Shown one piece after another: positions 1 through 37,061 of a DNA stretch of 64,000 nt. The notes beneath the pieces are model-generated. The model was not told the DNA's origin and did no database searches. It worked only from the letters and a program-made list of their open reading frames with translations. The stretch is from IMG/VR virus record IMGVR_UViG_3300027759_004177, positions 292,866 to 356,865 of that record; one strand, given 5' to 3'. The translations under genes were made by a program, and so were the position numbers. How positions within the stretch are numbered: position 1 is the stretch's first letter; each line of letters starts with the position of its first letter.

Positions 1-10
1 CGGATCGGTA

Positions 11-11266: not shown

Positions 11267-11269
11267 ACT

Positions 11270-12616: not shown

Positions 12617-12623
12617 TATTGGC

Positions 12624-12631
12624 GATAAATA
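12624..12631 (+). promoter_or_regulatory. T4-late-promoter-like box GATAAATA
   Basis: Intergenic, 27 nt upstream of a fibre gene. Identical or similar boxes at 9000, 14624, 16665 (+) and 46357, 55406, 62050 (-). Confidence 0.55.
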
Positions 12632-12657
12632 AGTTAATATAATTAAGAAATTACAAT

Positions 12658-14628: not shown

Positions 14629-14656
14629 ATACTAAGATAATCAAAGCGAAAAAAAC

Positions 14657-20899: not shown

Positions 20900-21615
20900 A
20901 TATCTTAGTCAATGGAACTTCTATCAGTCGCGGCGAAAATTCGTGGCCATATTTTTTACAATCGCAGATGAATTGTTCTTTGATTAATCTAGCTCAGGCT
21001 GGTAGTGGCAACACGTACATACATGAAGCAACAGTAGCAGAACTCAGCGAAAGATCCTACAACCTCGTGTTAATACAATGGACATACGCAGATCGTTTTG
21101 ATTTCAGAGTTAAAGATATCAGCAAGTTCGGCGACACAACATATACAACCAACTTTCAATCCCGGCAGAACGATTGGCCTAGCAAACAAATACATCCTGT
21201 AAATGATCAAGACTACGTACAACCGGATTGGATATTTGGATGTGGGTATCTAAACGAACGCCAGGATAACAGCCTTGGCAGGGTATTTAAACCTTTATAC
21301 CAGCACGTTGGAGCAAATGAACATGTATTTTCAACTTTAATAAAAATTATATCATTGCAAAGCACACTCAAGGCCTTGGGTATTCCTTACTTGTTTACAG
21401 AATACCGCCCAATGACTCGACTAAGTCGATTCGATCAGCTTTACAAATTAATTGATTGGAATAACTTTTATTCGGGCAAACATTTATTTACTATTGCCAA
21501 AGAACATGATGCACTGGATGATACTTTACACCCATCCACGGAATGTCAGCAACTATATGCCGTTGACTTACATAACGATTTAGTTAAACGGGGATATATC
21601 AATGCAAGATCTTAG
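20896..21615 (+). CDS. SGNH/GDSL-like hydrolase or acyltransferase
   Basis: ILVNGTSIS, NLAQAGSGN, QWT, C-terminal DTLHP. Confidence 0.55.
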   Translation: MNILVNGTSISRGENSWPYFLQSQMNCSLINLAQAGSGNTYIHEATVAELSERSYNLVLIQWTYADRFDFRVKDISKFGDTTYTTNFQSRQNDWPSKQIHPVNDQDYVQPDWIFGCGYLNERQDNSLGRVFKPLYQHVGANEHVFSTLIKIISLQSTLKALGIPYLFTEYRPMTRLSRFDQLYKLIDWNNFYSGKHLFTIAKEHDALDDTLHPSTECQQLYAVDLHNDLVKRGYINARS

Positions 21616-22594
21616 CCCAAACAATCCAGCAGGTTGTCAAGATCGATTCATCTTTGATTTGAACGACAACAGAATCTGGAACATCAACGGGTTTATTAAA
21701 TTTTTAGTTGATAATCAAGGTCGAGTCATTGACATAGAGATACCCGAGGGTGTGGCGTTAGACAGCATAGGCATTTACGATTTGTTAGATTTGTTCTCAT
21801 TTAAATCGGTCACTATACGCAGTTTTAATCTAGTGCAACAATCACATCCTGTATACAAATTAAATTTTCATCCGTTGGCATTTAAATACTTTATTGTATC
21901 TCCTAATACAGATTACAGCCAATATCATGGTTGGTCTGGAAAATATATGTTTGGGGCATTTTATAATAGACCAACTTGGTCACGAATTGGCCTAGCCGCA
22001 TATTTACACACCAATCACAGTGACAAGACTCTGTTGAATTTCCGTTACGACCCTGACAATACAGACATTAGAAACACATTTGAACTAGACCAACTATTTC
22101 AAATTGACCCTAAATCCTTGGAATATTTTGGTCATCTAATACCTGCGTTGCCATTACGAGTGGAGCCCGTGGATGGGTACACCATCGGAGTCAGCACCAA
22201 AGAGCATACTGACCAACTTAGTGAATTTTATACTGACTTCTTAATTGACATTGTAAGCGAAACATTTGTACGTGGCAGATGTTTTTATCCTACAGAAAAA
22301 ACTGTTAGACCCATGCTGATGAAAAAGCCTTTTATACATATGGGACCCAAATGTTTTTTAATACATTTACGTCAAATGGGATTTCGAACGTTTGGTGATT
22401 TTTGGTCCGAGGACTATGATGGATACGGTATGGATCAGCGGTATAAGTATATACTCAAATTAATTGACACGCTGGCAGCCAAGTCCAAACAAGAACTACA
22501 AGACATGTATGCCCGTATGCAACCAATTTTAGAGCACAATTATCAATTGTTACTGACAAAACAATTTACACGAGAAATTACCTATGTTGAATAG
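21602..22594 (+). CDS. Glycosyltransferase-like protein (GT10/GT47-like C-terminus)
   Basis: DIVSETF...PTEKTVRPMLMKKPFI...LRQMGFRTF...EDYD...LEHNYQ. Confidence 0.45.
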   Translation: MQDLSPNNPAGCQDRFIFDLNDNRIWNINGFIKFLVDNQGRVIDIEIPEGVALDSIGIYDLLDLFSFKSVTIRSFNLVQQSHPVYKLNFHPLAFKYFIVSPNTDYSQYHGWSGKYMFGAFYNRPTWSRIGLAAYLHTNHSDKTLLNFRYDPDNTDIRNTFELDQLFQIDPKSLEYFGHLIPALPLRVEPVDGYTIGVSTKEHTDQLSEFYTDFLIDIVSETFVRGRCFYPTEKTVRPMLMKKPFIHMGPKCFLIHLRQMGFRTFGDFWSEDYDGYGMDQRYKYILKLIDTLAAKSKQELQDMYARMQPILEHNYQLLLTKQFTREITYVE

Positions 22595-23630
22595 CGAATA
22601 CCATGTTGGTATCAACGACAACAAGTTTTGGCGTAAAGACTTGTTAGTTATGCACCTGTACGATTGCTTAAACACCAACCAACAGCCAGCCCTGCGGGTA
22701 ACTCCAGAAGGTTCAAGCCTTGCAGGCTGTGGTTTATATAGGTACTTGGATGCGTTTTGCAAACATACTGGATACGATAAAAAGAACATCAGCATACGCA
22801 CAGGCAACATGATCGAACAACACCCTGAGTACACAATTATAAAAGATGCCACCGCTTGGTTCGAAGTTCCTATTATGCAACAATGGGCACAAAAAAATCC
22901 GATCAACACAGGCACTATGCCTAGATTACACTTTGGACACTTTGTTGGAAAAAGCAATTGGAATAGATTGTGGATTGGTGCTGTGTTGCACAGTAAATAC
23001 AATGATAAGTTATTTCAAACATATAACACCGGCATTGGTACACACTATCTTACTAAGAATGACGGCCTTTGTGATTTTGTGGGCTTAGAAGATCTGGTCA
23101 AAATGGAATGTGATCAAATTGATGTGGCTGTCGAATTTTTAAAGTCTTGTCCAAAGTTTATACCTGAGGACATAGAAGCAATTAAAAATATGTCAACTTA
23201 CATCAAACAAGACGATTACTACCCTATACAATTACCAGCCAATCTTAACATATTGAAATACTATAACAATATATTTGTGGACATTATCCATGAAACATTT
23301 GTTCGTGATGAAGTATGTTTTGCTACAGAAAAAACTTGGAGAACAATGTTAGCACGTAGGCCTTTTATTACCATGGGAGGCAGAAATCATTTGGCTAATT
23401 TAAAGCGTCTAGGATTCCGTACATTCAATGACATCTGGGATGAAGGTTACGACGAGTATGGTATGCAGTGGCGTGTTAAAGAAATACTAAAACTAATAGA
23501 TACTATCAGTTCTTGGTCAGTGGAAAAGATACAACAGGTCTTACAAGATATGCAACCTATACTAGAACACAACTATCAAACTTTTATGACACTAACACAT
23601 CAAAAAATACAGCGAACATTCAATGACTAA
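22584..23630 (+). CDS. Glycosyltransferase-like protein, paralogue of ORF 21602
   Basis: DIIHETF...ATEKTWR...RPFI...LGFRTF...EGYD...LEHNYQ. Confidence 0.45.
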   Translation: MLNSEYHVGINDNKFWRKDLLVMHLYDCLNTNQQPALRVTPEGSSLAGCGLYRYLDAFCKHTGYDKKNISIRTGNMIEQHPEYTIIKDATAWFEVPIMQQWAQKNPINTGTMPRLHFGHFVGKSNWNRLWIGAVLHSKYNDKLFQTYNTGIGTHYLTKNDGLCDFVGLEDLVKMECDQIDVAVEFLKSCPKFIPEDIEAIKNMSTYIKQDDYYPIQLPANLNILKYYNNIFVDIIHETFVRDEVCFATEKTWRTMLARRPFITMGGRNHLANLKRLGFRTFNDIWDEGYDEYGMQWRVKEILKLIDTISSWSVEKIQQVLQDMQPILEHNYQTFMTLTHQKIQRTFND

Positions 23631-24459
23631 ATTCCATTTACCTTTTGTAGAAATGATGGTTACACAATTTTGTAATCTAAGCTGTGTTGGCTGTAGTAAC
23701 TATGCTGACCTAAAACACACAGGTTATGTTCCTTGGGCAGATGGTCGGCGCGAAATAGAATCGTGGCTACCACGCATGACAATTGAAGACTTTGGTATCA
23801 TGGGTGGCGAGCCCCTGATCAATCCCGAACTTAAACAATGGATACGTGGCTTGCGTGAGTTATTACCCACAAGCCCCATACGCTTTAGCACCAATGGCGA
23901 ATTGCTAGATCGACATTTAGATGTGCTAGAAACAGCACACGAAGTGGGCAACTTTGTTTTTAAGATCACTGTACACCAACACAGCGAGCGTGTAGAACGT
24001 GTCATTGCTAAAATCTTCTCAATGTACAAGTGGGAACCTGTGTACGAATATGGCATCTATCGTTACAAAACCACAAACGGATTAAGATTTCAGGTCAATC
24101 GTCCGCTGACATTTATCAAGTATTATAAGAATGATTACGCCAACATGATGCCGTTCAATTCCAATCCTGTGGATAGTTTCAATATTTGTATGCAACAACG
24201 ATGTCCACTCATGTTCAATGGACGTATGTACAAGTGTAGTACACTAGGCGGATTGGAACAAACACTAGATCGTTTTAGTAACACCGACCCTGCATGGGAG
24301 CCATACAAAGGCAAATACATTACACCTACGAGCCCAGATGCAGATATTGCGGCGTTCTTAAACAATTATGGTCGTCCACATCAAGTGTGTACAATGTGTC
24401 CTACCGCCCAGGATGACGAAAGTGTTATTTTACATTATAATAACGTAATAACAAAATGA
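23623..24459 (+). CDS. Radical SAM protein with C-terminal Cys cluster
   Basis: CNLSCVGC, GGEP, and C-terminal C...CP...YKC...CTMC (SPASM/twitch-like). Confidence 0.85.
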   Translation: MTKFHLPFVEMMVTQFCNLSCVGCSNYADLKHTGYVPWADGRREIESWLPRMTIEDFGIMGGEPLINPELKQWIRGLRELLPTSPIRFSTNGELLDRHLDVLETAHEVGNFVFKITVHQHSERVERVIAKIFSMYKWEPVYEYGIYRYKTTNGLRFQVNRPLTFIKYYKNDYANMMPFNSNPVDSFNICMQQRCPLMFNGRMYKCSTLGGLEQTLDRFSNTDPAWEPYKGKYITPTSPDADIAAFLNNYGRPHQVCTMCPTAQDDESVILHYNNVITK

Positions 24460-25337
24460 CAAGATTCTTTGCCTTCGGGTGCTCCTTTACTAACTCTAAA
24501 AATCCTACTTGGGCTGACATAGTGGCGCACGAGTACAACCATTACCAAAACTGGGGACAGGCTGGTGCAGGTAATAGTTTTATATTCTACAGTCTAATGG
24601 AATGTAACAAGCGTAATCAGATTACTCCGGACGATGTAGTAATGATCATGTGGAGCAGCATTGGTAGAGAAGATCGTTATGTTGGAGGAGAATGGTTGAC
24701 TCCTGGTAGTATATACAATCAACAAGATTATGATGAGAACTTTGTAAAGAAGTTTACAGATCCAACAGGATACTTGTTACGAGATGCAGCACACTTGGCT
24801 GGTGCTAAAGCCATATTAGATAATATTGGGTGTCGGTATTATTTTTTTAGTATTGTTCCGTTTAATGTTCCAGACGATAACGTTTTTAAAATCTTTAGCA
24901 TAGATAATAAAATATTAAATGTTTATGCTGAAGAATTTCGATCTGTGCGTCCCAGTGTATACGAAGTTGTCTTTGATCACGACTGGTACAGCCGGGCCGG
25001 CATTAAACAAGAAGACAAGCTCAAAGAAGAATACGAAATTAAACGTGGCGATGATTGGCCCACATGGGATAAGTTTATAATACAAGACTTCGGCGGTGTA
25101 CCCAAAGATATTAAAGATGAAATAAACAACCAACACGAGTTTACCAACAGATATTTGCGTAGGTATGACACACATCCAACTCCAGCAGAATATTTAGAAT
25201 ATATCACACGAGTAGCACCAGACATAGAAGTATCCTCTGCCACACAAGATTGGGTAGCAACAGTGACTGATAGATTAATCAAACACCAAGACTTAACCAA
25301 ACTTTGGAAACCTAATAGAAAGCCTGCGAGATTCTAA
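24456..25337 (+). CDS. SGNH-like hydrolase or acyltransferase
   Basis: FFAFGCSFT, NWGQAGAGN, MWS, DTHPT. Confidence 0.55.
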   Translation: MTRFFAFGCSFTNSKNPTWADIVAHEYNHYQNWGQAGAGNSFIFYSLMECNKRNQITPDDVVMIMWSSIGREDRYVGGEWLTPGSIYNQQDYDENFVKKFTDPTGYLLRDAAHLAGAKAILDNIGCRYYFFSIVPFNVPDDNVFKIFSIDNKILNVYAEEFRSVRPSVYEVVFDHDWYSRAGIKQEDKLKEEYEIKRGDDWPTWDKFIIQDFGGVPKDIKDEINNQHEFTNRYLRRYDTHPTPAEYLEYITRVAPDIEVSSATQDWVATVTDRLIKHQDLTKLWKPNRKPARF

Positions 25338-26719
25338 TGACCAAATCAACATTTATGACAGCCGCAGAAAAGATGAAGGAACTATTGGGCCCGAGTCTTT
25401 GCCTGGCCAAATGGAAACAGGTTAGCCTGCATCTAGCTACTGGTATGACCAACAGTTGTTACCATCCACCCTTACATGAAATAGATCCTGCACCCTTAAA
25501 AGAAAATCCTGGTGCACTACACAACACAGTACACAAAAAAGATCAACGTGTGATCATGCTCAAGAACGAACGCCCTACGGAATGTAATTATTGCTGGACA
25601 CAAGAGGACATGGGCAATCTCAGTGATCGTCATTACAGATCAGGAGAACCCTGGGCCGCCGACGACTACAATGCAATTAAAGCCAGCACAGGTACGGAAG
25701 ATTGGATACCCAGTTATGTTGAAGTTAATTTTAATCACGTGTGTAATCTCAAGTGTAGCTATTGTAGTCCGCAGTTCTCTAGTACCTGGATGCAAGAAAC
25801 TGACTATTATGGTGCCTATCCCACAAGCACTCCGCATAACGATCCTGCTCACTTCGCTGGTCGTCGCAGGCCTATACCGGTCAGCTACGATAATCCATAT
25901 GTGGATGCATTCTGGGAATGGTGGCCTGAGCTGTATCCGCACCTGAAACATTTCCGTATGACCGGTGGCGAGCCGCTAATGGACAAGAATACTTATAAGG
26001 TATTTGATTATGTGTTGGCACTACCAAATCCAGAACTACACTTGGACGTGACCAGCAACTTTAGTGTTGACGATCGTTTATTTGACAAGTATCTGGGTTA
26101 TGTCAAACAGTTATGTAACACACAGATAGAACACTTTATGCAGTACGTGAGTTTGGATAGTGGTAAACCCAGGCATGCAGAATACATTAGACACGGATTA
26201 AATTTTGCCAGAATGACTGATAATGTAAATCGTTTCTTAACAGGCGTTCCCTACCGTAATAGTCTAACATTTATCATTACCATGAACAATCTAAGTGTGT
26301 TGGGCCTACAGCGACAACTGGAATGGATACTTGATCTCCGAAGCACACATAGTAAAACCTATCAACGTGTTTGGTTTGATACTCCCCTGCTACGTACACC
26401 CACTTGGCAAAGTGTACAAATACTGCCCGAAGTCTACGTTGGTGTGTTAGAACGTGTGGCCGACTGGATGGAACTACAGTTGGAAACAGCAGATAGACCA
26501 TTTCAGGGATTCAAAGACTACGAAGTACAGCGTATGCGCCGTGATATAGATTGGATGAAAGCAGGTCGCAATTTGGATCCAGAATATGTTAAACTGCAAC
26601 GTGCAGATTTTTATCGTTTCTTTAACGAGCACGACAAACGACGCAAAACTGACTTTTTAAAAACTTTTCCAGAAATGACAGAATTTTGGAACGAATGTAA
26701 GTACCATGCCCAGAATTAA
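25337..26719 (+). CDS. Radical SAM protein with N-terminal twitch/SPASM-like Cys cluster
   Basis: CLAKW...SCYH...CNYCW, then CNLKCSYC and TGGEP. Confidence 0.9.
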   Translation: MTKSTFMTAAEKMKELLGPSLCLAKWKQVSLHLATGMTNSCYHPPLHEIDPAPLKENPGALHNTVHKKDQRVIMLKNERPTECNYCWTQEDMGNLSDRHYRSGEPWAADDYNAIKASTGTEDWIPSYVEVNFNHVCNLKCSYCSPQFSSTWMQETDYYGAYPTSTPHNDPAHFAGRRRPIPVSYDNPYVDAFWEWWPELYPHLKHFRMTGGEPLMDKNTYKVFDYVLALPNPELHLDVTSNFSVDDRLFDKYLGYVKQLCNTQIEHFMQYVSLDSGKPRHAEYIRHGLNFARMTDNVNRFLTGVPYRNSLTFIITMNNLSVLGLQRQLEWILDLRSTHSKTYQRVWFDTPLLRTPTWQSVQILPEVYVGVLERVADWMELQLETADRPFQGFKDYEVQRMRRDIDWMKAGRNLDPEYVKLQRADFYRFFNEHDKRRKTDFLKTFPEMTEFWNECKYHAQN

Positions 26720-28055
26720 CAACGAAACTGATTTAGAGTACAAACGCAGAGTGATTGACATCAAGTCAGACAGCTTCTGTGCGGCCAAGTGGTACAATGC
26801 CACCATATGGCTAGGCTCGGGGCAAACCACCAGTTGTCATCATCCCCTGCCGCATCAAGTCAGTGTAGCTGAAGTAGAAGCGAACCCCAAAGCCTTACAC
26901 AACACCCCAAAGAAAAAAGCCGAACGTGCTCAAATGCAACGAGGAGAACGTCCCAGCGGTTGCGAATACTGCTGGAAAATAGAAGACATCGGTCGCGACA
27001 ACATTAGCGATCGTGTTTACAAAACAGTCATATATGATGACAAGGATTTGGATTATGCTTTTCAAACTCCAGCAAATGAAGATGTGGATTTACAAACACT
27101 TGAAATTGCCTTTGACCGCACCTGCCAGTTCGCTTGCTCTTATTGCAACCCGGCGTTTAGTAGCACTTGGGTCAAGGACATTAGGAATAATGGTGCTTAT
27201 ACCAATCTTGTCAGCGATGGCCGCAATCACTTTACTCACGCTCATGACGGCAGTCAGCTATACCGGTTTGGAGAAACGAATCCGTATGTTGAAGCCTTCC
27301 ACAAATGGTGGGAAACAGACTTACATAGAACGTTGAAAGAGTTACGTATCACTGGGGGCGAGCCATTGATGAGTGCAGAAACTTGGAAGTTGATTGATTG
27401 GTTTAAAACTAACAAAGGCAAAAGTTTTACACGTCTTGCTATCAACAGTAACTTAGGCACTGAAGTAGACATTGATCGTTTACTTGCCGCCATTGATGGT
27501 GTAGAAGTTGACCTATATACCAGCAATGAATCAATAGGCTTGCAGGCCGAATACATTAGAGATGGTCTTGTGTTTGACGACTGGGCTAACAATGTAGAAC
27601 GTTTGCTAGATTCGGGTAAGTTTCGTGGCCTGCATGTCATGTGTACTATTAATGCATTGTGCTTGGATACACTAGACAGCTTTCTTGAAATGGTATATAA
27701 CTGGAAACTTGAGTACGGCACGGATGCCATTAACTTCTCGCTGAATATATTACGTTTTCCAAGTTTTCAAAGTCCTCTGGTATTGCCAGACAACATACGA
27801 ACACAATACAGAACACAATTAAGTGACTTCTATAAAACACACAAAGACACTGGGGTGCTACATGGTTTTGAGATTGATCAATTAAAACGCCTGATTGATT
27901 ATCTTGATGTTGTTATAACTCCACACACGGGTGCCATGGAACAATCTATCTTACAACACGATTTTAAAAACTTCTTCTCACAATACGATCAACGTCGTGG
28001 TAAGAATTTTGTAGAGACGTTTCCTAATTTAACAGAATGGTATAATACACTATGA
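26706..28055 (+). CDS. Radical SAM protein with N-terminal twitch/SPASM-like Cys cluster
   Basis: CAAKW...SCHH...CEYCW, then CQFACSYC and TGGEP. Confidence 0.9.
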   Translation: MPRINNETDLEYKRRVIDIKSDSFCAAKWYNATIWLGSGQTTSCHHPLPHQVSVAEVEANPKALHNTPKKKAERAQMQRGERPSGCEYCWKIEDIGRDNISDRVYKTVIYDDKDLDYAFQTPANEDVDLQTLEIAFDRTCQFACSYCNPAFSSTWVKDIRNNGAYTNLVSDGRNHFTHAHDGSQLYRFGETNPYVEAFHKWWETDLHRTLKELRITGGEPLMSAETWKLIDWFKTNKGKSFTRLAINSNLGTEVDIDRLLAAIDGVEVDLYTSNESIGLQAEYIRDGLVFDDWANNVERLLDSGKFRGLHVMCTINALCLDTLDSFLEMVYNWKLEYGTDAINFSLNILRFPSFQSPLVLPDNIRTQYRTQLSDFYKTHKDTGVLHGFEIDQLKRLIDYLDVVITPHTGAMEQSILQHDFKNFFSQYDQRRGKNFVETFPNLTEWYNTL

Positions 28056-29383
28056 CCAAAGAATTTTATAACAAGGGTTATGACTATATGGCACGTAAAC
28101 CATATTTTATTGAACTCGAACAGTTGAATGACTCTCAGCAAGACTTATTAATAAAAAGCGAAACATTTTGCATGATGCCTTGGGTACACATGCATGCCTT
28201 CCCAGACGGTCGTGCATATCCTTGCTGTGTGGCAGACTATTGGCATCCTGTGGGGGACCTACGTAAAAGCACTATGGAACAAGTTTGGAATCAAGAACCT
28301 TATCGTAACTTGCGTAAGAATATGGTTAGCGAAACCAAGAGCAAAGAGTGTACCAAGTGCTACGAACAAGAACGCAATGGATTTTTTAGTATGCGTAACG
28401 ATGCCAATCGTAACTACGGACATCATATAGGAGAAGTAAATGAAACCAAAGAAGATGGAACCAATCCTAAGTTCAAAATACGTTATTGGGACGTTCGTTT
28501 TAGTAACCTTTGTAACTTCCGTTGTCGCAGCTGTGGGCCTATTTTTAGCAGTAATTGGTATCAAGATCACGTAAAAATGTACGGCAAGAAACCTGATGTG
28601 TTAGGCCGTGACATGGCTGTGATTGAATATACCACAGGCAACGAAGATGACATGATTGCACAAATGATGCCACACGTTCCACACCTGGAGCAGGTATACT
28701 TTGCCGGTGGCGAGCCCTTGATCATGAAAGAACATTATTACTTGCTTGAGAAGTTGATTGAAGCAGGTAAAACTGATGTGCGTATCCAATATAACACAAA
28801 CTTTAGTGAACTGGCATTTAAGGACAAGCACGTATTTGAATATTGGCGACATTTTAAAAATGTCAGTGTAGGTGCCAGTTTAGATGCCAGCGGAGCTAGA
28901 GCGGAGCTGATGCGTAAAGGAACAGATTGGACACAGGCAGTAGATAATCGTCGTCGCATGATAGCAGAAGTGCCACATGTGGATTTTTACATTAGTGCCA
29001 CAGTTAGTTCAATGAACGTGTTGCATGTATTAGACTTTCATAGAGAATGGACCGAGCTTGGATTGATCAAAGCCAAGGACTTTAATGTAAACATTTGCCA
29101 AAGCCCGGAATGGTATCGAGTAGATATCTTTCCAGAACAGTTTAAACAGGATGTTATTGTGCCCGCCTACGAGCAACACATTGAGTGGTTAACACCGCAA
29201 GACAATCTTAAACGTGCTACCAATGGATTTCGTAGCACTCTCAAATTCATGAACAGCACAGATCAAAGTCATTTGTGGCCACGCTTTGTTGAGGAGTGTG
29301 CCAAACTAGACGCTGTACGTCGAGAAGATTTTTGGGCAACATTCCCTGAATTAGCCAGCTTACGAGATTATGAACCTACCTAA
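28052..29383 (+). CDS. Radical SAM protein with N-terminal twitch/SPASM-like Cys cluster
   Basis: CMMPW...PCC...CTKCY, then CNFRCRSC and AGGEP. Confidence 0.9.
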   Translation: MTKEFYNKGYDYMARKPYFIELEQLNDSQQDLLIKSETFCMMPWVHMHAFPDGRAYPCCVADYWHPVGDLRKSTMEQVWNQEPYRNLRKNMVSETKSKECTKCYEQERNGFFSMRNDANRNYGHHIGEVNETKEDGTNPKFKIRYWDVRFSNLCNFRCRSCGPIFSSNWYQDHVKMYGKKPDVLGRDMAVIEYTTGNEDDMIAQMMPHVPHLEQVYFAGGEPLIMKEHYYLLEKLIEAGKTDVRIQYNTNFSELAFKDKHVFEYWRHFKNVSVGASLDASGARAELMRKGTDWTQAVDNRRRMIAEVPHVDFYISATVSSMNVLHVLDFHREWTELGLIKAKDFNVNICQSPEWYRVDIFPEQFKQDVIVPAYEQHIEWLTPQDNLKRATNGFRSTLKFMNSTDQSHLWPRFVEECAKLDAVRREDFWATFPELASLRDYEPT

Positions 29384-30587
29384 CACGATATGTATGTTGC
29401 CGTGGGTCAGCATTGAAGCTAGTCCAATGGGCACCACACGTCCTTGCTGTATGGCATATGATGAGATTACCGATGAGTCAGGCAAGAAGTACGACTTAAA
29501 CGAAACTAATCTTGAAGTGGCATACCACAGTGAGTATATGCAGGACTTACGACGTCAGTTTCGTTGTGGAGAAAAACCTGCAACCTGTAATCGTTGTTGG
29601 GAAGAAGAAGCCGCAGGTAGGGACAGTAAACGTATACACAGCCAAGTAAGATTAAAAGAATTATACAAACAAGTAGACTGGGCTAATGACGATCCTGATC
29701 AACTATGGTTTGTTGATTTAAAACTGGGTAACATCTGTAACTTAAAATGTCGTATATGTGGTTCTTGGTCCAGTAGTAAGTGGGCTGAAGAAGAACTTGC
29801 TTACATGCCCAAAGACTTTAACAAAAAAGAGCACATTGCCTACACTTGGCTACGGCAAGGTGCATGGCCACGCAAGACCACAACCTTCTGGGATAACATG
29901 CGTGACTTGTTGCCCAACATCCGGTACTTTGAATTTACCGGTGGCGAGCCCTGGATGATACAAGAACACTTTGATTTATTACAGTACGCAGTAGATCAAG
30001 GATACAGTAAAAATATTGATATACACTACAACACCAATGCTACACAACAACCTAGTACTCCACAAATTTTAATGTGGAAAGAGTTTGGCCGAGTTGACAT
30101 TGCCTTTAGTATTGACAACGTAGGCTCACGTTTTGAATATGAACGCTACGGAGCCAATTGGCTATTGGCAAACAAGATCATTGATGATGTGCATTTTACA
30201 CAGGCTGTCGACGCTCCTAATATTACCACACAGTTATGCTTTACTATCAACATACAAAACGTGTATTACCTAGACGAACTACTAGCCTGGGCGGATACAA
30301 AAAGATTTGGCGACGTCTATTTTAATATGATGCATAGCCCAGATCACATGAGCATACAAATGATGACTCCGGCAGCACAGGAGTTGGTACTAAACAAATT
30401 AAAAACAACATTTTGGAAAAATAACAAATATCAACAAGAAATTGATAGTGTAATTAAATTTATTGAACTTGGCACAGGCAGTGATGGCCGAGAGTTTTTG
30501 TTTAAGATGCAACGTACAGATGAACATCGCAAACAAAACTTTATGGATACACATGAAGAAATAGCACGGGCAATGGGTTATGAATAA
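29370..30587 (+). CDS. Radical SAM protein with N-terminal twitch/SPASM-like Cys cluster
   Basis: CMLPW...PCC...CNRCW, then CNLKCRIC and TGGEP. Confidence 0.9.
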   Translation: MNLPNTICMLPWVSIEASPMGTTRPCCMAYDEITDESGKKYDLNETNLEVAYHSEYMQDLRRQFRCGEKPATCNRCWEEEAAGRDSKRIHSQVRLKELYKQVDWANDDPDQLWFVDLKLGNICNLKCRICGSWSSSKWAEEELAYMPKDFNKKEHIAYTWLRQGAWPRKTTTFWDNMRDLLPNIRYFEFTGGEPWMIQEHFDLLQYAVDQGYSKNIDIHYNTNATQQPSTPQILMWKEFGRVDIAFSIDNVGSRFEYERYGANWLLANKIIDDVHFTQAVDAPNITTQLCFTINIQNVYYLDELLAWADTKRFGDVYFNMMHSPDHMSIQMMTPAAQELVLNKLKTTFWKNNKYQQEIDSVIKFIELGTGSDGREFLFKMQRTDEHRKQNFMDTHEEIARAMGYE

Positions 30588-31887
30588 ACCGGCAACACTA
30601 TGCATGGCACCATGGACACACACTTATCTTAGTCCACAAACAGAACGACGCTTGTGCTGTGCCAGCCGTGAACCTGCACAAAACTTTGAACAGTATATAG
30701 ATACATCGGCCGGCACAGGACGATACATTCCCATCACATTAGATGAGCATTGGAACAGTGAACACATGCGTAGTGTGCGCCGTAGAATGATGGCTGGAGA
30801 AACCTTGCCCGAGTGTGAAGTGTGTAACAACAAACTATTAAACACAGACGTTTACCGTAGTTATTTTAATCAATTGTTTGGAGATAAGTACTTACAGGCC
30901 CGAGAGCATACTGATGCAACAGGCTACACGACAATGAAGCCAGTTTCGTGGGATTACAGGTTCAGCAATCTCTGTAATTTTAAATGCCGCATGTGCGGCG
31001 ACATGTTGTCGAGTGCTTGGGAGAGCGAGCAACGCCAACACGGAATGATCGACTTTACAAATCCAAAGAACAATTGGATGCGTCTTGAAGTCAAAGAGCA
31101 AATAGAACAGTTTCAAGACACCCAGATAGAGCAAGAGTTTGCAGATGCCGTGGAACAGCATCGAGTTGAGGAAGTCTACTGGGTTGGTGGTGAACCGTTG
31201 ATGTATGAGCAACACTGGCGCTATATGCAACGGATAATTGAATTGGGAGATGGACCAAATGTTTACGCTCGATACAACACTAATCTTAGTCGTATTAGTT
31301 ATAGAGGCGTTAATTTGTTTAGCGATATTTTATGCCGGTTACGTGACTGGCAAATCTGTGCAAGCATCGACGGCACGGGCAGAATTGGAGAGTATATTAG
31401 ATCAGGTCTTGATTTTGATCAGTGGCTTGCGAACATCCGCCAGGGACTTGCGTACCACCATCACCGCCGCCAGATCCGTCTGGACTTCACTCTTACTACA
31501 CCAGGACTCTTTGAAGTACAAGCGATACAAACGCTCGCCCAAGAACTCGGAGTAGATGTTTTAGCAAAGGTGGTGTTCTCGTTTAGTCCGGACATCATTA
31601 TGAGCCCGTTGGCACTACCTAAAGATGTACTGCATCCTTGGATAGACGAAATTGTGAATGGTACTCCTGGGGAACGTCCTCTTACCGGCCCGTTACGGGA
31701 CATACTGATTCAACTCAAAACAAGACCCACTTTTGCCGAACAATGGCCTGACTCGTATCAAGCAGGCCTACGCAAGGGCAAACAACGAATTCTACAGTTG
31801 GAAAAAATCAGAAACGACACATATACGTTTAGAGATATAATGTACTCGAGACCTGCGGCACTAGAATGGTATGACTCAATCAATTAA
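30580..31887 (+). CDS. Radical SAM protein with N-terminal twitch/SPASM-like Cys cluster
   Basis: CMAPW...LCC...CEVC, then CNFKCRMC and VGGEP. Confidence 0.9.
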   Translation: MNKPATLCMAPWTHTYLSPQTERRLCCASREPAQNFEQYIDTSAGTGRYIPITLDEHWNSEHMRSVRRRMMAGETLPECEVCNNKLLNTDVYRSYFNQLFGDKYLQAREHTDATGYTTMKPVSWDYRFSNLCNFKCRMCGDMLSSAWESEQRQHGMIDFTNPKNNWMRLEVKEQIEQFQDTQIEQEFADAVEQHRVEEVYWVGGEPLMYEQHWRYMQRIIELGDGPNVYARYNTNLSRISYRGVNLFSDILCRLRDWQICASIDGTGRIGEYIRSGLDFDQWLANIRQGLAYHHHRRQIRLDFTLTTPGLFEVQAIQTLAQELGVDVLAKVVFSFSPDIIMSPLALPKDVLHPWIDEIVNGTPGERPLTGPLRDILIQLKTRPTFAEQWPDSYQAGLRKGKQRILQLEKIRNDTYTFRDIMYSRPAALEWYDSIN

Positions 31888-32956
31888 AGTAATCTTACGC
31901 AACCCTTTAAACTACACAGATCAAGTTGATTATACAATTACGGCTGCAGATAACCAATTGGCACGGGATTGGGTATCAGCATTAAAATTAGAACTATCGA
32001 GTGGTCGGCTATTAGAAAAGAATTTTTGTTTTATGGGTTTTCCCCGTACAGCCCGCACACTGGAATATCTTTGTGACGAACTCAATCAAGCAGTAGATAT
32101 CATTAATAGTTCTGGCATAGAATATCATATTCCTGAAGTGTTTTCCCCTGACACGGTACGTGGATTTGATTATGCAGATAATGGTGTCAATCATGCTGTA
32201 ATGAATCAACTACACAATCACTTTGAGCGATTGCAAGGAACTGTTTGGGGTTTAAGTGATTATTACCGACGTGCCAACTACGAAACAAAGTATGCTATCC
32301 GACAGTTAAACAACATCTGTCACGAGATGGAAAACCTAATACTAAGTCAGCGTAAAGAAGCCACAGCACCTTATTGGGTACGTCCAAGCCAAATTACTAC
32401 ATTTCTACAAGCCGAGCGTTATGACCTCAAAGGCGAACATCGCACAGGGTTTGCCATCAATGGATATGATCGTGTACTAGGCGGAGTATATATGCATTGG
32501 ACACAGATAGGCAAAACCTTGTTTGAAGTGTTCCGCGACGAAGGAGCACCAGAACTTACAGCAACAACGTGTGAGGCCATCACAGAGTTAAAATACTACT
32601 CAGGCGAATTTGATGTAGAGTGGGGTAACGATGTGACCTTACTAGGCGACAACAATCCTTGGCACACAAAGGAGCAGATAGAGTTTCGCAAGTGGCTAAT
32701 AGCCAACAATCGAGATCCTGCAGATCCTGCATTAAGTCTAGGATACTTGCCTGTAGGACAAGTAGAATTGACAAAGAGTTTTGGTACAGCAGATTATCAA
32801 CAGATATGGAACATACTTGGCAATCATTTGGACATATATCAAATAGAAGCAGGAGACGTATCCGCAACATTTGATTATTGCTGGACCGATGCCACGTACA
32901 AACAACAACAAATAGATCGGATGAGGCCGGGATATGACTATAGTAGCCGGGGGTGA
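31871..32956 (+). CDS. Hypothetical protein
   Basis: 361-aa ORF overlapping both neighbours; His/Glu motifs HNHFE and CHEME; family not recognised. Confidence 0.7.
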   Translation: MTQSIKVILRNPLNYTDQVDYTITAADNQLARDWVSALKLELSSGRLLEKNFCFMGFPRTARTLEYLCDELNQAVDIINSSGIEYHIPEVFSPDTVRGFDYADNGVNHAVMNQLHNHFERLQGTVWGLSDYYRRANYETKYAIRQLNNICHEMENLILSQRKEATAPYWVRPSQITTFLQAERYDLKGEHRTGFAINGYDRVLGGVYMHWTQIGKTLFEVFRDEGAPELTATTCEAITELKYYSGEFDVEWGNDVTLLGDNNPWHTKEQIEFRKWLIANNRDPADPALSLGYLPVGQVELTKSFGTADYQQIWNILGNHLDIYQIEAGDVSATFDYCWTDATYKQQQIDRMRPGYDYSSRG

Positions 32957-33737
32957 TAGTTTTGTTTTTGGTCACGAATTAAAAGACTGCGGCAAGAACC
33001 CTAGTAAAAATACCTTTACGGCTTTATTGGGCGCCGACGTTTGTGTAGCTCGTGGCGGATACTCCAATAGTGCTATTGCTAGAACAGTGATGTCTGAATG
33101 CAGTCGACATCAAGACAATCTTGGCGTTATTGTTAGTTGGACTTTTTCTAGTAGGTTTGAATTTAGATTTGCCTACAGTACTGGACAAGTTAGCAGCCCC
33201 TGGTACAGCATCAATGCCTGGACCATAGAAGATAATTTTGAAAATATCAAAAGTGAGTTTGTTACAGAAAACGAAGCAATATTTAACAGCCAAGTAGAAA
33301 CTATAAAACGGGCACAGAGCACAGGGGTACAGGACTTTGCAAAAACATTTTATAAACATGTGGGCAGTACAGAGTACTGGGAAATATATACTACACTTAA
33401 AGAAATTGTATTATTACAAAATTATTTGAAGCTACGCAATATACCTTATATGTTTACCTGTGCTGATAACCAAATTGTAAAAAATTATACTGTAGACAAT
33501 GCAGACGTACATATTTCTGCATTATACAATCAAATTGATTTTGATCATTGGTTTTGGTTCCCGCCGGGCACCGGAGCAAATCAAACCGAAACCCCAAGAG
33601 GTTTTTATCAGTGGGCCGTGGAGAATAAATACCCAGTAGGCACCACACATCCGCTGGAACAAGCACACATAGACGCATCCACGTTGATGCAAGGAAAATT
33701 CAATGAATTGGTTACGAAACATTTACAATCGAATTAA
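32934..33737 (+). CDS. SGNH-like hydrolase or acyltransferase
   Basis: IVAGGDSFVFG, ARGGYSN, SWT, THPL. Confidence 0.6.
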   Translation: MTIVAGGDSFVFGHELKDCGKNPSKNTFTALLGADVCVARGGYSNSAIARTVMSECSRHQDNLGVIVSWTFSSRFEFRFAYSTGQVSSPWYSINAWTIEDNFENIKSEFVTENEAIFNSQVETIKRAQSTGVQDFAKTFYKHVGSTEYWEIYTTLKEIVLLQNYLKLRNIPYMFTCADNQIVKNYTVDNADVHISALYNQIDFDHWFWFPPGTGANQTETPRGFYQWAVENKYPVGTTHPLEQAHIDASTLMQGKFNELVTKHLQSN

Positions 33738-33804
33738 ACTAGAATTACGCTATCGCAAGAAGTTAAAAGAGCTTCGTAAACGAGATCCATTTATCTATAA
33801 ATGA
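33703..33804 (+). CDS. 33-aa basic peptide MNWLRNIYNRIKLELRYRKKLKELRKRDPFIYK (below the ORF-track cutoff)
   Basis: Translated by hand. It fills the only gap in the operon, and its TGA overlaps the ATG of the next gene (ATGA at 33801-33804) like the other coupled genes. Confidence 0.65.
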   Translation: MNWLRNIYNRIKLELRYRKKLKELRKRDPFIYK

Positions 33805-34445
33805 TTTATTGTATCGGAGACAGTTTTACCTACGGGGAAGAACTTGCTGACCGTAATACAGCATGGCCGGCAATATTGGGTAAAAAATTAAATCAACCTG
33901 TGACCAATTGGGGCAAACCAGCAACTGGAAACCATCGCATGGTCAAGCGTACAATGGATGCTGTATTTGCGGGTGCTTCGTTGATTGTCGTTGGTTGGTC
34001 AGATCCAGCTAGACAAGAGTTTGCTGATGATATCAGTATTACTGACTTATGGGCAGGTAGGGATTATCGTAGAATGCAAACCTGTACTGATCATCGACGT
34101 GATTTAATCAAGTATATGACAGCGTATGACGTTCCGGGATATTACTACGCACAGTGGATACGACAAATCGTTTTAACACAGACTTTTTGTCGTGCAAATG
34201 CCGTTCCTTGTGTGATGTTTAGTGCGTGTAATGCTGAAAGTTGGAATATTGATTATATAAAAAAACAAAGTCAACACGAGCATTTAACGCGACACGTAGA
34301 TGTAGACACATACATTGGTTGGCCATATTCAGGATCAACGGAATGGACATATGGTACACCGCATGGCCCGGGCGGTCATCCTCTGGAACAGGGTCATGAG
34401 ATTATAGCAGAAAAAATTTATGAGCATATTAGCCGTCGGGTGTAG
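33801..34445 (+). CDS. SGNH-like hydrolase or acyltransferase
   Basis: IYCIGDSFTYG, NWGKPATGN, GWS, GGHPL. Confidence 0.65.
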   Translation: MIYCIGDSFTYGEELADRNTAWPAILGKKLNQPVTNWGKPATGNHRMVKRTMDAVFAGASLIVVGWSDPARQEFADDISITDLWAGRDYRRMQTCTDHRRDLIKYMTAYDVPGYYYAQWIRQIVLTQTFCRANAVPCVMFSACNAESWNIDYIKKQSQHEHLTRHVDVDTYIGWPYSGSTEWTYGTPHGPGGHPLEQGHEIIAEKIYEHISRRV

Positions 34446-35070
34446 TTTTACAGCAGGTGCAGAATTACCCAATCCTGCAGAATCTGCTTGGCCCAACCTA
34501 ATAGGAAAATTAAATAATCGTCCAGTAAAAAATTTGGGACTTGGCGGCGCATCCAATGATCGTACATTTAGATTGGTTATAGAGGAAACTGCTCAACAAC
34601 GATTTGATTTGGTTGTTATACAGTGGACTGAACCTAGTCGTATGGAAATATGGAATGCCCGCCGCCGCAATACCATGGATGTAAATATAGGAAAGTTGCA
34701 TTCAAACATGTTTGAGATGTCTTGGCTCGATACTTACTATTGCAATCACTACGATGATTTCCACGCTCATCGTAAATGGGCCGCACAGATATTGTCCTTG
34801 CAAGGATATTTAAAATCAATCGATCAGCCCTATGTTATGGTCAGTTTAAATGGACTTGATCAAAGACTTTACACGGGTGCATGGAGTAGTGTAAAATACT
34901 TGTGGGACGGTGTTGACACCATGCATTACCCAGGTTGGCCGTTTGAGGGAATTTATATGTGGCAAGGTGATTGTCCTAGAGCTCCCGGCGGGCATCCATT
35001 GGAGCTGGGACACAAAAGAATAGCAGAAAAAATAAATGAGCATATTAGGAATCTCGGCTGGCTTCCATGA
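34420..35070 (+). CDS. SGNH-like hydrolase or acyltransferase, tandem paralogue of ORF 33801
   Basis: ILAVGCSFTAG, NLGLGGASN, QWT, GGHPL. Confidence 0.6.
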   Translation: MSILAVGCSFTAGAELPNPAESAWPNLIGKLNNRPVKNLGLGGASNDRTFRLVIEETAQQRFDLVVIQWTEPSRMEIWNARRRNTMDVNIGKLHSNMFEMSWLDTYYCNHYDDFHAHRKWAAQILSLQGYLKSIDQPYVMVSLNGLDQRLYTGAWSSVKYLWDGVDTMHYPGWPFEGIYMWQGDCPRAPGGHPLELGHKRIAEKINEHIRNLGWLP

Positions 35071-37050: not shown

Positions 37051-37061
37051 AGGAAAACAAA

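What the first reader, a model, noticed from the sequence alone, without database searches (positions are those of the whole stretch)
25337..31887. Five tandem radical SAM paralogues with the auxiliary Cys cluster at the N-terminus
Seen: each has CxxxW...(S/P/L)C(C/H/Y)...CxxC before the CxxxCxxC...SSxW core and GGEP, and most end in a D/ExxR...F...FPE-like tail. They form two subtypes (25337 and 26706; 28052, 29370 and 30580). Established: SPASM/twitch domains are normally C-terminal and typify peptide maturases, anaerobic sulfatase maturases and sugar dehydrogenases such as BtrN. Inference: a permuted subfamily acting in sequence or as a hetero-oligomer on one substrate.
Basis: partly seen in the sequence, partly recalled or inferred. 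Interest (0 to 1): 0.7.

Follow-up and report, generated by a model that had tools for sequence, protein, structure and literature searches.

The report
Five-gene radical SAM cassette in phage
A 357-kb freshwater jumbo phage carries five old, individually conserved radical SAM enzymes with their extra iron-sulfur domain at the front instead of the back; they sit in a large sugar-building gene island and most likely tailor an unusual glycan, but the enzyme family is already catalogued and its chemistry is untested.

Summary
All five ORFs match NCBIfam NF033640 (N_Twi_rSAM) at 288-398 bits against a cut-off of 170. A profile of their N-terminal domain hits only the C-terminal twitch domain of BtrN in the PDB, and the four cluster-ligand Cys align. 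The "permuted" architecture is therefore real, but it is already a curated family whose function is uncharacterised.

New findings:
- The window lies in a 356.9-kb freshwater jumbo phage with 12 N_Twi copies and 5 other radical SAM genes.
- The five tandem copies share only 18-33% identity, and dN/dS is 0.04-0.10 where it could be estimated.
- Each copy forms its own supported clade. The order R1-R2-R3-R4-R5 recurs in most of 80 diverged viral loci.
- Natural R3+R4 fusion proteins exist.
- The phage has co-expanded GT-B-like glycosyltransferases (10) and SGNH-like proteins (10). The island also holds a NodU-like carbamoyltransferase, a sugar aminotransferase and an SDR.
- Cellular homologues sit beside GT2, PhyH, UbiA-like and carbamoyltransferase genes.

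Best reading: five non-redundant sugar-tailoring enzymes, BtrN-like oxidation or epimerisation, in a phage glycan pathway. The substrate and the glycan's target are inferred, not shown. The hetero-oligomer idea remains untested.

The parts
25337..26719 (+). R1, N-terminal-twitch radical SAM protein (460 aa)
   Evidence: NF033640 at 305 bits, cut-off 170. Cys 22, 41, 83, 86 plus C136xxxC140xxC143. Own orthologue clade, SH-aLRT 100.
26706..28055 (+). R2, N-terminal-twitch radical SAM protein (449 aa)
   Evidence: NF033640 at 295 bits. Cys 25, 44, 86, 89 plus C140/144/147. Own clade, SH-aLRT 96. 33% identical to R1.
28052..29383 (+). R3, N-terminal-twitch radical SAM protein (443 aa)
   Evidence: NF033640 at 398 bits. 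Pfam SPASM on residues 40-104, E 9e-13. AF2 model pLDDT 94.7. N-terminal domain aligns to the BtrN twitch domain.
29370..30587 (+). R4, N-terminal-twitch radical SAM protein (405 aa)
   Evidence: NF033640 at 330 bits. Found fused behind an R3-like module in P0121, P0124 and P0127. Own clade, SH-aLRT 99.
30580..31887 (+). R5, N-terminal-twitch radical SAM protein (435 aa)
   Evidence: NF033640 at 288 bits. Own clade, SH-aLRT 98-100.
31871..32956 (+). Conserved 361-aa partner ORF of unknown function directly after R5
   Evidence: A homologue lies within 8 kb of the array in 60 of 80 viral loci. Follows R5 in L013, L014 and L016. No Pfam, NCBIfam, PHROG or Atlas hit.
23623..24459 (+). Small radical SAM protein (278 aa) without an auxiliary domain
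   Evidence: Pfam Radical_SAM E 1e-13. Only sub-threshold NCBIfam matches. CxxxCxxC at residue 17.
24456..25337 (+). SGNH/DUF6071-like protein directly upstream of R1
   Evidence: Matches an HMM built from the genome's DUF6071-like paralogues, E 8e-14; N-terminal G-C-S-F block.
20896..21615 (+). SGNH/DUF6071-like paralogue
   Evidence: Pfam DUF6071 E 1.7e-5. Member of the 9-member paralogue family.
32934..35070 (+). Three SGNH/DUF6071-like paralogues (32934-33737, 33801-34445, 34420-35070), with a 33-aa ORF at 33703-33804 between the first two
   Evidence: DUF6071 and Lipase_GDSL_2 hits. GDSF block-I motifs visible in the translations. Paralogue family.
21602..23630 (+). Two GT-B-like glycosyltransferase paralogues (21602-22594, 22584-23630)
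   Evidence: Ten-member paralogue family. AF2 model of 22584-23630 has pLDDT 92. Nearly all top fold matches are GT-B glycosyltransferases: T4 beta-glucosyltransferase Z 9.2, fucosyltransferases, POGLUT, OGT.
37887..39065 (-). Third GT-B-like paralogue in the window
   Evidence: Same BLAST family as 22584-23630.
18050..19673 (+). Two GT-A-like nucleotide-sugar transferase candidates (18050-18835, 18822-19673)
   Evidence: The two are paralogues. Nearest named Atlas clusters are nucleotide-diphospho-sugar transferase, Nucleotid_trans and GT8, score 0.95-0.96, with 10 of 10 in one clan. This is a lead, not an alignment.
35036..36517 (+). NodU/CmcH-type carbamoyltransferase
   Evidence: Pfam Carbam_trans_N and _C, E 4e-38 and 3e-48. 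NodU model at 139 bits, below its cut-off. Homologues lie near the array in 42 of 80 viral loci and in 8 cellular loci.
37044..37901 (+). P-loop kinase-like protein (APS_kinase/AAA_18)
   Evidence: Pfam APS_kinase E 8e-7. Conserved in relatives.
40877..41986 (-). DegT/PseC-type sugar aminotransferase
   Evidence: Pfam DegT E 2e-77. PseC-like at 173 bits, below its cut-off. Lies directly beside the array in L102.
41961..42908 (-). SDR sugar-nucleotide epimerase/dehydratase
   Evidence: Pfam Epimerase E 1e-45. One of five paralogues in the genome.

Best explanation
R1-R5 are five non-redundant members of the N-terminal-twitch radical SAM family (NF033640). Each should bind the SAM-cleaving [4Fe-4S] cluster on CxxxCxxC and a second, fully Cys-ligated [4Fe-4S] cluster on the N-terminal twitch domain. 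Together they form an old, conserved five-gene cassette, transcribed in one direction with overlapping reading frames, inside a glycan-biosynthesis island of a freshwater jumbo phage.

Most likely mechanism (inferred): each enzyme abstracts a hydrogen atom from a different C-H position of a sugar, either a nucleotide-sugar or a growing glycan. The radical is then resolved by oxidation to a ketone, with the electron leaving through the twitch cluster as in BtrN, or by epimerisation. The products would be handed on to the neighbouring aminotransferase, carbamoyltransferase, SGNH-type acyl-handling proteins and glycosyltransferases.

Shown here: family membership, the domain permutation, conservation of the Cys ligands, age and purifying selection of each copy, conserved gene order across many phages, and the sugar-enzyme context.

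Inferred: Fe-S binding, sugar as the substrate, the reaction type, and what the final glycan decorates (virion, host envelope or DNA).
For: Family and architecture:
- NF033640 at 288-398 bits.
- The N-terminal profile hits only the BtrN twitch domain, with the four Cys aligned.
- The full-length profile shows the permutation.
- The R3 model is confident, pLDDT 94.7. Its core resembles the SPASM/twitch clade: BlsE Z 12.6, SkfB, CteB, anSME, MoaA, viperin.

Non-redundancy:
- Pairwise identity is 18-33%.
- dN/dS is 0.04-0.10 where dS is not saturated: R1 and R3-R5 against L014, R3-R5 against L016. R2 was saturated in every comparison.
- Each of R1-R5 is a supported clade with orthologues from seven diverged viral loci.
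- Of the 80 best viral loci, 69 hold 5 or 6 copies within 8 kb. The order R1-R2-R3-R4-R5 is exact in 32, and most others show the same order with an insertion or a contig end.

Coupling:
- Overlapping reading frames.
- R3-like + R4-like fusion proteins in three separate 50%-identity clusters, carried on phage-like contigs.

Sugar context in the phage:
- A 10-member GT-B-like family and SGNH/DUF6071-like proteins, 9 by BLAST plus w24456.
- GT-A-like candidates.
- Carbamoyltransferase, DegT aminotransferase, SDR, and a heptose-1-P adenylyltransferase-like/cupin protein.

Sugar context in cells: nearest neighbours of homologues are enriched in PhyH, GT2, other radical SAM, UbiA-like and carbamoyltransferase genes, plus ABC ATPase and UDP-Glc dehydrogenase. 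No RiPP machinery was seen. A GT2-N_Twi fusion protein exists (P0156).
Against: - No member of NF033640 has a known reaction as far as I could find, so the chemistry is analogy only.
- The rSAM core is about as similar to peptide maturases (TigE, SkfB, CteB, SuiB) as to sugar enzymes (BlsE, BtrN, DesII).
- Some homologues are fused to TPR, Sel1 or ankyrin repeats, which bind proteins.
- Many neighbouring ORFs have no annotation. The GT-B assignment rests on modest fold scores: Z about 9, Foldseek E about 1e-3, TM below 0.5.
- The island lies next to tail-fibre genes, which fits a protein substrate equally well.
- No phage-encoded reductant or SAM synthetase was found.
Confidence: 0.55

Rival explanations
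1. The five enzymes modify a protein or peptide, not a sugar. Candidates are residues of virion proteins such as the neighbouring tail fibres, or a RiPP-like peptide, by epimerisation, cross-linking or oxidation as SPASM/twitch peptide maturases do.
For: - Structural and profile neighbours of the core include TigE (E 8.5e-11), SkfB, CteB, SuiB, anSME and EpeE.
- Homologues are fused to the protein-binding TPR, Sel1 and ankyrin repeats.
- The array lies about 8 kb downstream of tail-fibre genes, and the genome has an 18-member tail-fibre-like family.
- A conserved 33-aa ORF sits nearby.
Against: - Pfam finds no RRE/PqqD-type peptide-recognition domain; the N-terminal region is the twitch domain itself.
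- The twitch domain matches only BtrN, a carbohydrate enzyme.
- No protease, leader-peptide or exporter genes appear in the phage or cellular neighbourhoods; those are dominated by sugar enzymes.
- The 33-aa ORF is Lys/Arg-rich with no Cys, and no repeated core motif was noted.
Confidence: 0.17
2. The island, including the radical SAM cassette, builds a glycan that hypermodifies the phage's DNA to evade restriction, as phage DNA glycosyltransferases do.
For: - The best fold match of the GT-B-like family is T4 DNA beta-glucosyltransferase (Z 9.2). T4 alpha-glucosyltransferase (Z 8.5) and a phage HY126 glycosyltransferase (Z 8.8) are also near the top.
- A P-loop kinase, ThyA and DHFR lie beside the island.
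- Phage glycosyltransferases that hypermodify DNA with diverse glycans are reported (Pyle et al. 2024, cited in PMC12619734).
Against: - The genome has one Thymidylat_synt homologue, and it scores above the cut-off of a thymidylate synthase equivalog model. No second, hydroxymethylase-like copy exists.
- Ten GT-B-like, several GT-A-like and ten SGNH-like proteins plus a carbamoyltransferase suggest a larger glycan (my inference).
- Cellular homologues sit beside GT2, UbiA-like and ABC-ATPase genes, a surface-glycan type of context.
Confidence: 0.1
3. R1-R5 work as one hetero-oligomeric machine rather than as separate sequential enzymes.
For: - Overlapping reading frames allow translational coupling.
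- Gene order is fixed across many phages.
- R3+R4 fusions recur in the same order, as do two-module fusions in Elusimicrobia and others.
Against: - No direct evidence of binding.
- Insertions of unrelated ORFs between copies are tolerated: a 356-aa ORF between R4 and R5 in L014, and a DUF6071-like ORF between R1 and R2 in L016.
- Eight loci have R5 before R4.
- Cellular arrays have other compositions.
Confidence: 0.2
4. The copies are redundant recent duplicates drifting under relaxed selection.
For: They are tandem and in the same orientation. One of the 12 genomic copies, at genome position 211318-212202, is short, and its HMM match spans two in-frame stops.
Against: Pairwise identity is 18-33%. 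dN/dS is 0.04-0.10 for the copies where it could be estimated. Each copy has its own orthologue clade across diverged phages and Bdellovibrionota MAGs. All Fe-S Cys and GGE are invariant.
Confidence: 0.01

Closest known systems
NCBIfam NF033640, N_Twi_rSAM (twitch domain-containing radical SAM protein)
   Same: All five ORFs score above the curated cut-off over the full model. They share the architecture: N-terminal 4-Cys twitch domain, CxxxCxxC core and GGE.
   Different: The family model is a bioinformatic definition. I found no paper assigning a reaction. The conserved five-paralogue cassette and its phage context are not part of the definition as far as I can tell.
BtrN (2-deoxy-scyllo-inosamine dehydrogenase of butirosin biosynthesis; PDB 4M7S/4M7T)
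   Same: It is the only solved protein whose sequence matches the N-terminal domain (E 6.7e-6), and the four Cys are aligned. From memory, these are the four ligands of BtrN's auxiliary [4Fe-4S] cluster (Goldman et al. 2013). It is a carbohydrate-type radical SAM enzyme that works alongside a DegT-family aminotransferase (my knowledge of the 2-deoxystreptamine pathway).
   Different: In BtrN the twitch domain is C-terminal (residues 162-244); here it is N-terminal. BtrN is about 250 aa, these are 405-460 aa with an extra helical C-terminal region. Core similarity is no closer than to other SPASM/twitch enzymes. No 2-deoxy-scyllo-inosose synthase-like gene is in the genome.
SPASM/twitch radical SAM enzymes acting on sugars or nucleosides (BlsE, DesII, AprD4; HygY and NeoN epimerases)
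   Same: The radical SAM core has the same fold: BlsE Z 12.6, DesII Z 10.4, AprD4 Z 7.2. They are single-step tailoring enzymes in sugar pathways.
   Different: Sequence identity is 11-17%. In those enzymes the auxiliary domain, where present, is C-terminal. None is known to occur as a conserved five-paralogue array (my knowledge).
SPASM peptide maturases (anSME, SkfB, CteB, SuiB, TigE)
   Same: Core fold and profile similarity: TigE E 8.5e-11, SkfB Z 12.2.
   Different: Only one auxiliary-cluster motif (4-5 Cys) is present, not the 7-8 Cys of SPASM. No RRE domain, no precursor gene and no peptide-processing neighbours.
Virus-encoded glycosylation systems (giant-virus and chlorovirus glycan machinery, mycobacteriophage virion glycosylation, phage DNA glycosyltransferases)
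   Same: A virus carrying its own multi-enzyme sugar pathway with several glycosyltransferases (discussed for phages in PMC12619734).
   Different: I know of no described viral glycan pathway that includes a set of radical SAM enzymes (from memory, not checked). Here there are 12 N_Twi copies and 17 radical SAM genes in total.

Membership tests
NF033640 N_Twi_rSAM | Full-length HMM score at or above the curated cut-off (170 bits) | tested here: met
   305, 295, 398, 330 and 288 bits for R1-R5.
NF033640 N_Twi_rSAM | Twitch-type auxiliary-cluster domain N-terminal to the radical SAM core | tested here: met
   Pfam SPASM hits at the N-terminus of R3-R5. The profile of the N-terminal domain aligns to the BtrN twitch domain with four Cys matched. 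The permutation is shown by the full-length profile.
Radical SAM superfamily | CxxxCxxC cluster motif and GGE SAM-binding motif in a partial TIM barrel | tested here: met
   Motifs are invariant in all 12 genomic copies and in 107 aligned homologues. The AF2 model core matches radical SAM structures at Z 10-12.6.
Radical SAM superfamily | Binds [4Fe-4S] and reductively cleaves SAM | not testable with these tools
   Needs anaerobic purification, Fe/S analysis, EPR and a 5'-deoxyadenosine assay.
SPASM subfamily (two auxiliary clusters) | Seven or eight auxiliary Cys, including CxxCx5Cx3C | tested here: not met
   Only 4-6 Cys lie before the core and there is no CxxCx5Cx3C. The domain is twitch-like, not full SPASM.
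BtrN-type sugar/cyclitol dehydrogenase | C-terminal twitch domain on a compact (~250 aa) enzyme | tested here: not met
   The domain is N-terminal and the proteins are 405-460 aa.
BtrN-type sugar/cyclitol dehydrogenase | Oxidises a secondary alcohol of an amino-cyclitol or sugar | not testable with these tools
   Only context supports a sugar substrate. No 2-DOI synthase-like gene was found.
RiPP radical SAM maturase | Peptide-recognition (RRE/PqqD-like) domain and a cognate precursor peptide gene | tested here: not met
   No such Pfam domain in any of the five. The only small conserved ORF is basic and Cys-free. No peptide-processing neighbours.
GT-B glycosyltransferases (for the co-expanded 'family X') | Two Rossmann-like domains with the GT-B topology | tested here: inconclusive
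   The model has pLDDT 92 and nearly all top matches are GT-B enzymes, but Z is at most 9.2, Foldseek E is about 1e-3 and TM is below 0.5. No Pfam or NCBIfam hit.

The most novel reading that the evidence does not exclude
The R1-R5 cassette is a self-contained five-step radical pathway, carried by a large and widespread clade of jumbo phages. It would make a heavily C-H-functionalised sugar or pseudo-sugar of a kind not yet described, possibly aminoglycoside-like given the BtrN-like domain, DegT aminotransferase, NodU/TobZ-type carbamoyltransferase, kinase and glycosyltransferases. The phage would use the product on its virion or release it, for example against competing phages or host defences. 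It would be the first radical-SAM-based glycan or natural-product pathway known from a virus, and it would give a function to the uncharacterised N_Twi_rSAM family.
Probability: 0.12. Interest if true: 0.85.

Novelty: new variant of a known kind. Interest (0 to 1): 0.6.

Why it matters
N_Twi_rSAM is a large family with no known reaction: 1,491 clusters at 50% identity with E <= 1e-30. Here it appears as a fixed five-enzyme cassette under strong purifying selection, in phages found in many lake metagenomes. This has three consequences.
- It provides a defined, compact gene set for working out the chemistry.
- It suggests that some jumbo phages invest about a tenth of their genes in making their own complex glycan with radical chemistry (my estimate). 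That bears on how phages disguise virions, alter host surfaces or protect DNA.
- Cultured phages with family members exist and are annotated only as hypothetical or generic radical SAM proteins: Ralstonia phage RsoM2USA with two copies over the cut-off, and Vibrio phages K566/K567 with tblastn matches at about 23% identity. Experiments are therefore feasible.

If the enzymes prove to be ordinary sugar dehydrogenases or epimerases, the result is a useful annotation rather than a surprise.

Tried and rejected
- **Literature.** Searches for N-terminal twitch/SPASM radical SAM, for radical SAM in jumbo phages and for RsoM2USA found no paper on the family's function. The 'moraphage' paper describes another lineage, up to 307 kb, with no radical SAM mention.
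- **PDB by sequence.** phmmer with R3, and with its N-terminal domain alone, found nothing useful. Only the profiles worked.
- **Fold searches.** Foldseek against PDB and Swiss-Prot gave only generic radical SAM core matches, TM below 0.5. AFDB clusters returned unnamed family members.
- **Related loci.** The search for related loci with all paralogues aligned failed because no stretch was conserved enough; the R3-type alignment worked.
- **Complex prediction.** Complex prediction for R3+R4 gave no verdict (score 0.00) and is not evidence either way.
- **Unannotated ORFs.** Atlas found nothing for the 361-aa partner ORF and only a weak GT-A lead for 20000-20899. Pfam, NCBIfam and PHROGs found nothing for most island ORFs.
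- **Promoters and terminators.** The scan was no better than shuffled sequence.
- **Transcription.** One metatranscriptome gave eight short contigs (six near-identical) over the R1-R2 genes and the R3/R4 junction, and the tool warns that DNA can be present in such libraries. This is not proof of transcription.
- **Rejected ideas.** Relaxed-selection duplicates. Full SPASM with two auxiliary clusters. An hmC/hmU-type DNA modification route based on a second ThyA homologue. A phage-encoded 2-DOI synthase, flavodoxin, Fer2 ferredoxin or SAM synthetase.
- **dN/dS limits.** dS was saturated for the more distant relative L013, for R2 in every comparison, and for R1 against L016, so no value is given for those.

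Full report

Yes. Five same-strand ORFs lie at 25337-26719, 26706-28055, 28052-29383, 29370-30587 and 30580-31887. I call them R1-R5. Each overlaps the next by 4-14 nt.

Their translations each show the following:
- four N-terminal Cys, C-x18-C-x39-52-CxxC; R3-R5 have a CC doublet at the second position, and R4 has one further Cys at residue 66;
- then CxxxCxxC, an SSxW motif and GGEP;
- a C-terminal D/ExxR..F..FPE-like tail, clear in R1-R3 and degenerate in R4 and R5.

All five match NCBIfam NF033640 'N_Twi_rSAM, twitch domain-containing radical SAM protein' at 288-398 bits against a cut-off of 170. Pfam places a SPASM-type domain at the N-terminus of R3-R5. The tree splits the same way.

**2. 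Is the auxiliary domain really permuted?**

I tested this directly. A profile of the N-terminal 100 residues of 22 family members finds only one protein in the PDB, BtrN (E 6.7e-6). The match falls on BtrN residues 162-239, its C-terminal twitch domain, and all four invariant Cys align with BtrN Cys. From memory, these are the four ligands of BtrN's auxiliary [4Fe-4S] cluster.

With the full-length profile, positions 7-86 map to BtrN 162-244, while positions from about 100 onward map to the N-terminal barrels of TigE, viperin, SkfB and others. The architecture is therefore a twitch domain moved to the front.

Four conserved Cys suggest a fully ligated cluster, which in BtrN serves electron transfer rather than substrate ligation. 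That last point is inference.

The AF2 model of R3 is confident, pLDDT 94.7 and pTM 0.92. Only its core, residues about 140-400, matches solved structures, at the level of the SPASM/twitch clade in general: BlsE Z 12.6, SkfB 12.2, CteB 12.1, anSME 11.5, MoaA 11.3.

The architecture is not a discovery. It is a curated NCBI family, and the RadicalSAM.org paper notes that some Megacluster-1-1 members carry extra conserved Cys N-terminal to the barrel (PMC9477430). I found no paper assigning a reaction to the family.

**3. Where is it?**

The window is the last 64 kb of a 356,865-bp IMG/VR virus record rated 100% complete by CheckV. Tail-fibre proteins, a 2,999-aa ORF, ThyA and DHFR surround the island. 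Near-identical sequence occurs in freshwater and lake metagenomes from at least nine studies.

The genome holds:
- 12 N_Twi copies, 10 above the cut-off;
- 5 other radical SAM genes.

All-against-all BLAST shows the following co-expanded families:
- an 18-member tail-fibre-like family;
- the 12 N_Twi proteins;
- a 10-member family of ~340-aa proteins with no database hit;
- 9 DUF6071/SGNH-like proteins, plus w24456, making 10;
- 5 SDR epimerase/dehydratases.

I modelled the 340-aa family (pLDDT 92). Nearly all of the top 50 matches by two methods are GT-B glycosyltransferases: T4 beta-glucosyltransferase Z 9.2, fucosyltransferases, POGLUT, OGT, T4 alpha-glucosyltransferase. The scores are modest, so this is a probable rather than a proven assignment.

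The island also encodes:
- a NodU/CmcH-type carbamoyltransferase;
- a P-loop kinase-like protein;
- a DegT/PseC-like aminotransferase;
- an SDR;
- two GT-A-like candidates.

A second N_Twi cluster elsewhere in the genome sits beside a heptose-1-P adenylyltransferase-like/cupin protein, a methyltransferase, more GT-B-like proteins and an SGNH-like protein.

**4. Are the five copies redundant?**

No.
- They are only 18-33% identical.
- Against close relatives on other contigs, dN/dS is 0.04-0.10. This covers R1 and R3-R5 against L014 and R3-R5 against L016. R2 was saturated in every comparison.
- A scan of IMG/VR found at least 597 viral contigs with an R3-like gene.
- In the 80 best loci (47-81% identity to R3), 44 have five and 25 have six N_Twi genes within 8 kb.
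- Classified by best match, the order R1-R2-R3-R4-R5 is exact in 32 loci. Most others show the same order with one extra copy or a contig end, and eight have R4 and R5 swapped.
- In a maximum-likelihood tree, each of R1-R5 forms a clade with SH-aLRT 96-100 together with orthologues from seven diverged viral loci. Copies from Bdellovibrionota MAGs are their sisters.

The duplications therefore predate the divergence of these phages, and each copy has been kept.

**5. Do they work together?**

Evidence for coupling:
- overlapping reading frames;
- fixed gene order;
- a 361-aa ORF of unknown function that follows R5 in 60 of 80 loci;
- natural fusion proteins with an R3-like module followed by an R4-like module, in three separate 50%-identity clusters: P0121 (57% and 45% identity to R3 and R4), P0124 and P0127. 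P0121 and P0124 lie on phage-like contigs.

Evidence against an obligate complex:
- unrelated ORFs are inserted between copies in close relatives;
- cellular arrays have other compositions.

One complex prediction for R3+R4 gave no verdict and is not used.

**6. What do they act on?**

Family members occur in many cellular genomes, mainly Bdellovibrionota, Bacteroidota, Elusimicrobia and Acidobacteria. They are often in arrays of 2-8, and some have several modules fused.

Among 124 nearest-neighbour proteins from 33 such loci, the commonest Pfam families are:
- PhyH dioxygenases (8), GT2 glycosyltransferases (7) and other radical SAM proteins (7);
- then PhoX and UbiA-like proteins (3 each);
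- then carbamoyltransferase and ABC ATPase (2 each), with single sugar enzymes such as a UDP-GlcNAc 2-epimerase and a DegT aminotransferase.

Whole-locus clustering adds SDR epimerases in 10 loci, carbamoyltransferase in 8 and UDP-Glc dehydrogenase in 6.

One homologue is fused to a GT2 domain. Others are fused to TPR, Sel1 or ankyrin repeats. No RiPP-type genes appear.

Together with the BtrN-only match of the twitch domain and the phage island's content, this points to sugar or glycan tailoring. By analogy with BtrN, HygY and NeoN (my knowledge), the likely chemistry is H-atom abstraction from a sugar C-H followed by oxidation or epimerisation. A keto product would suit the nearby aminotransferase. 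This step is inference.

The target of the final glycan is open. A DNA route through hmC or hmU is unlikely, because the only Thymidylat_synt homologue scores as a canonical thymidylate synthase. No 2-deoxy-scyllo-inosose synthase-like gene, flavodoxin, Fer2 ferredoxin or SAM synthetase is encoded, so reductant and SAM must come from the host.

**7. Rivals**

| Rival | Confidence | Main point |
|---|---|---|
| Protein or peptide modification | about 0.17 | Supported by core similarity to peptide maturases, repeat-domain fusions and the tail-fibre neighbourhood. Weakened by the absence of an RRE domain, precursor or processing genes. |
| DNA glycan hypermodification | about 0.10 | Phage DNA glycosyltransferases are among the best fold matches, but there is no hydroxymethylase-like gene. 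|
| Hetero-oligomeric machine | about 0.20 | Not exclusive of the best explanation. |
| Relaxed-selection duplicates | about 0.01 | Rejected. |

**8. Verdict**

The proteins belong to a known but uncharacterised family. What is new is the conserved five-paralogue cassette in a widespread clade of jumbo phages, embedded in a very large phage-encoded sugar pathway. I rate it a new variant of a known kind, interest 0.6.

Noticed in passing
window 2-9001 (+): A 2,999-aa ORF, open at the window's 5' end, sits directly upstream of the tail-fibre genes. It has one BLAST paralogue in the genome (136917-138923). Its function was not examined.
   Followed up: no
window 9689-16651 (+) and 15 other genome sites: An 18-member paralogue family of tail-fibre-like proteins (PHROG tail-fibre hits, Peptidase_S74 chaperone domain, Gly_rich_2 neighbour). 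This is an unusually large fibre repertoire for one phage.
   Followed up: partly
window 33703-33804 (+): A 33-aa Lys/Arg-rich, Cys-free ORF overlaps both neighbouring SGNH-like genes and is also called as a gene in relatives L014 and L015. Nothing marks it as a precursor.
   Followed up: partly
genome 77487-78941 (-), outside the window (L100): The genome's one classical C-terminal SPASM radical SAM protein (484 aa) resembles peptide maturases: PapB model at 80 bits, below its cut-off. It is the only RiPP-like radical SAM gene in the phage.
   Followed up: partly
genome 211318-212202 (-), outside the window (L009): A short (294 aa) N_Twi copy. The HMM match runs across one TGA and one TAG, so it may be a decaying copy within the second cluster.
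   Followed up: no
L023, L024 (Haliscomenobacter MAG, contigs of 183 and 148 kb), L020 (Legionellales MAG): These 'bacterial' MAG contigs carry a similar N_Twi array: L023 and L024 have the same R1-R5 order, while L020 has R1-R2-B1-R3-R5. L023 and L024, and in part L020, also carry phage-clade families (GT-B-like, SGNH-like, tail-fibre-like). They are probably mis-binned jumbo-phage contigs.
   Followed up: partly
L019 (2.5-kb contig binned as Polynucleobacter sp. MAG): It carries R2- and R3-like genes at 58-72% identity. This is a weak hint that the host may be a freshwater betaproteobacterium, in line with the distant match to a Ralstonia phage, but it could equally be a binning artefact.
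   Followed up: no
L061, L069, L077, L078, L091, L096 (one Elusimicrobia MAG): This single MAG carries well over a dozen R3-type N_Twi genes across at least 10 contigs. Many are 560-1,130 aa and so carry extra domains or modules. It is an even larger expansion than in the phage.
   Followed up: no
L102 (15.6-kb phage-like contig): A compact version of the island: an R3-R4 fusion, a 447-aa ORF, DegT, another radical SAM gene, then ThyA and DHFR. An ART-PolyVal and a phosphomannomutase gene lie nearby.
   Followed up: no
Ralstonia phage RsoM2USA MG752970.1, 126888-128168 and 217357-218661: This cultured jumbo phage has two N_Twi genes above the family cut-off, and the one whose annotation was checked (126888-128168) is labelled 'hypothetical protein'. 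It could serve as an experimental system.
   Followed up: partly
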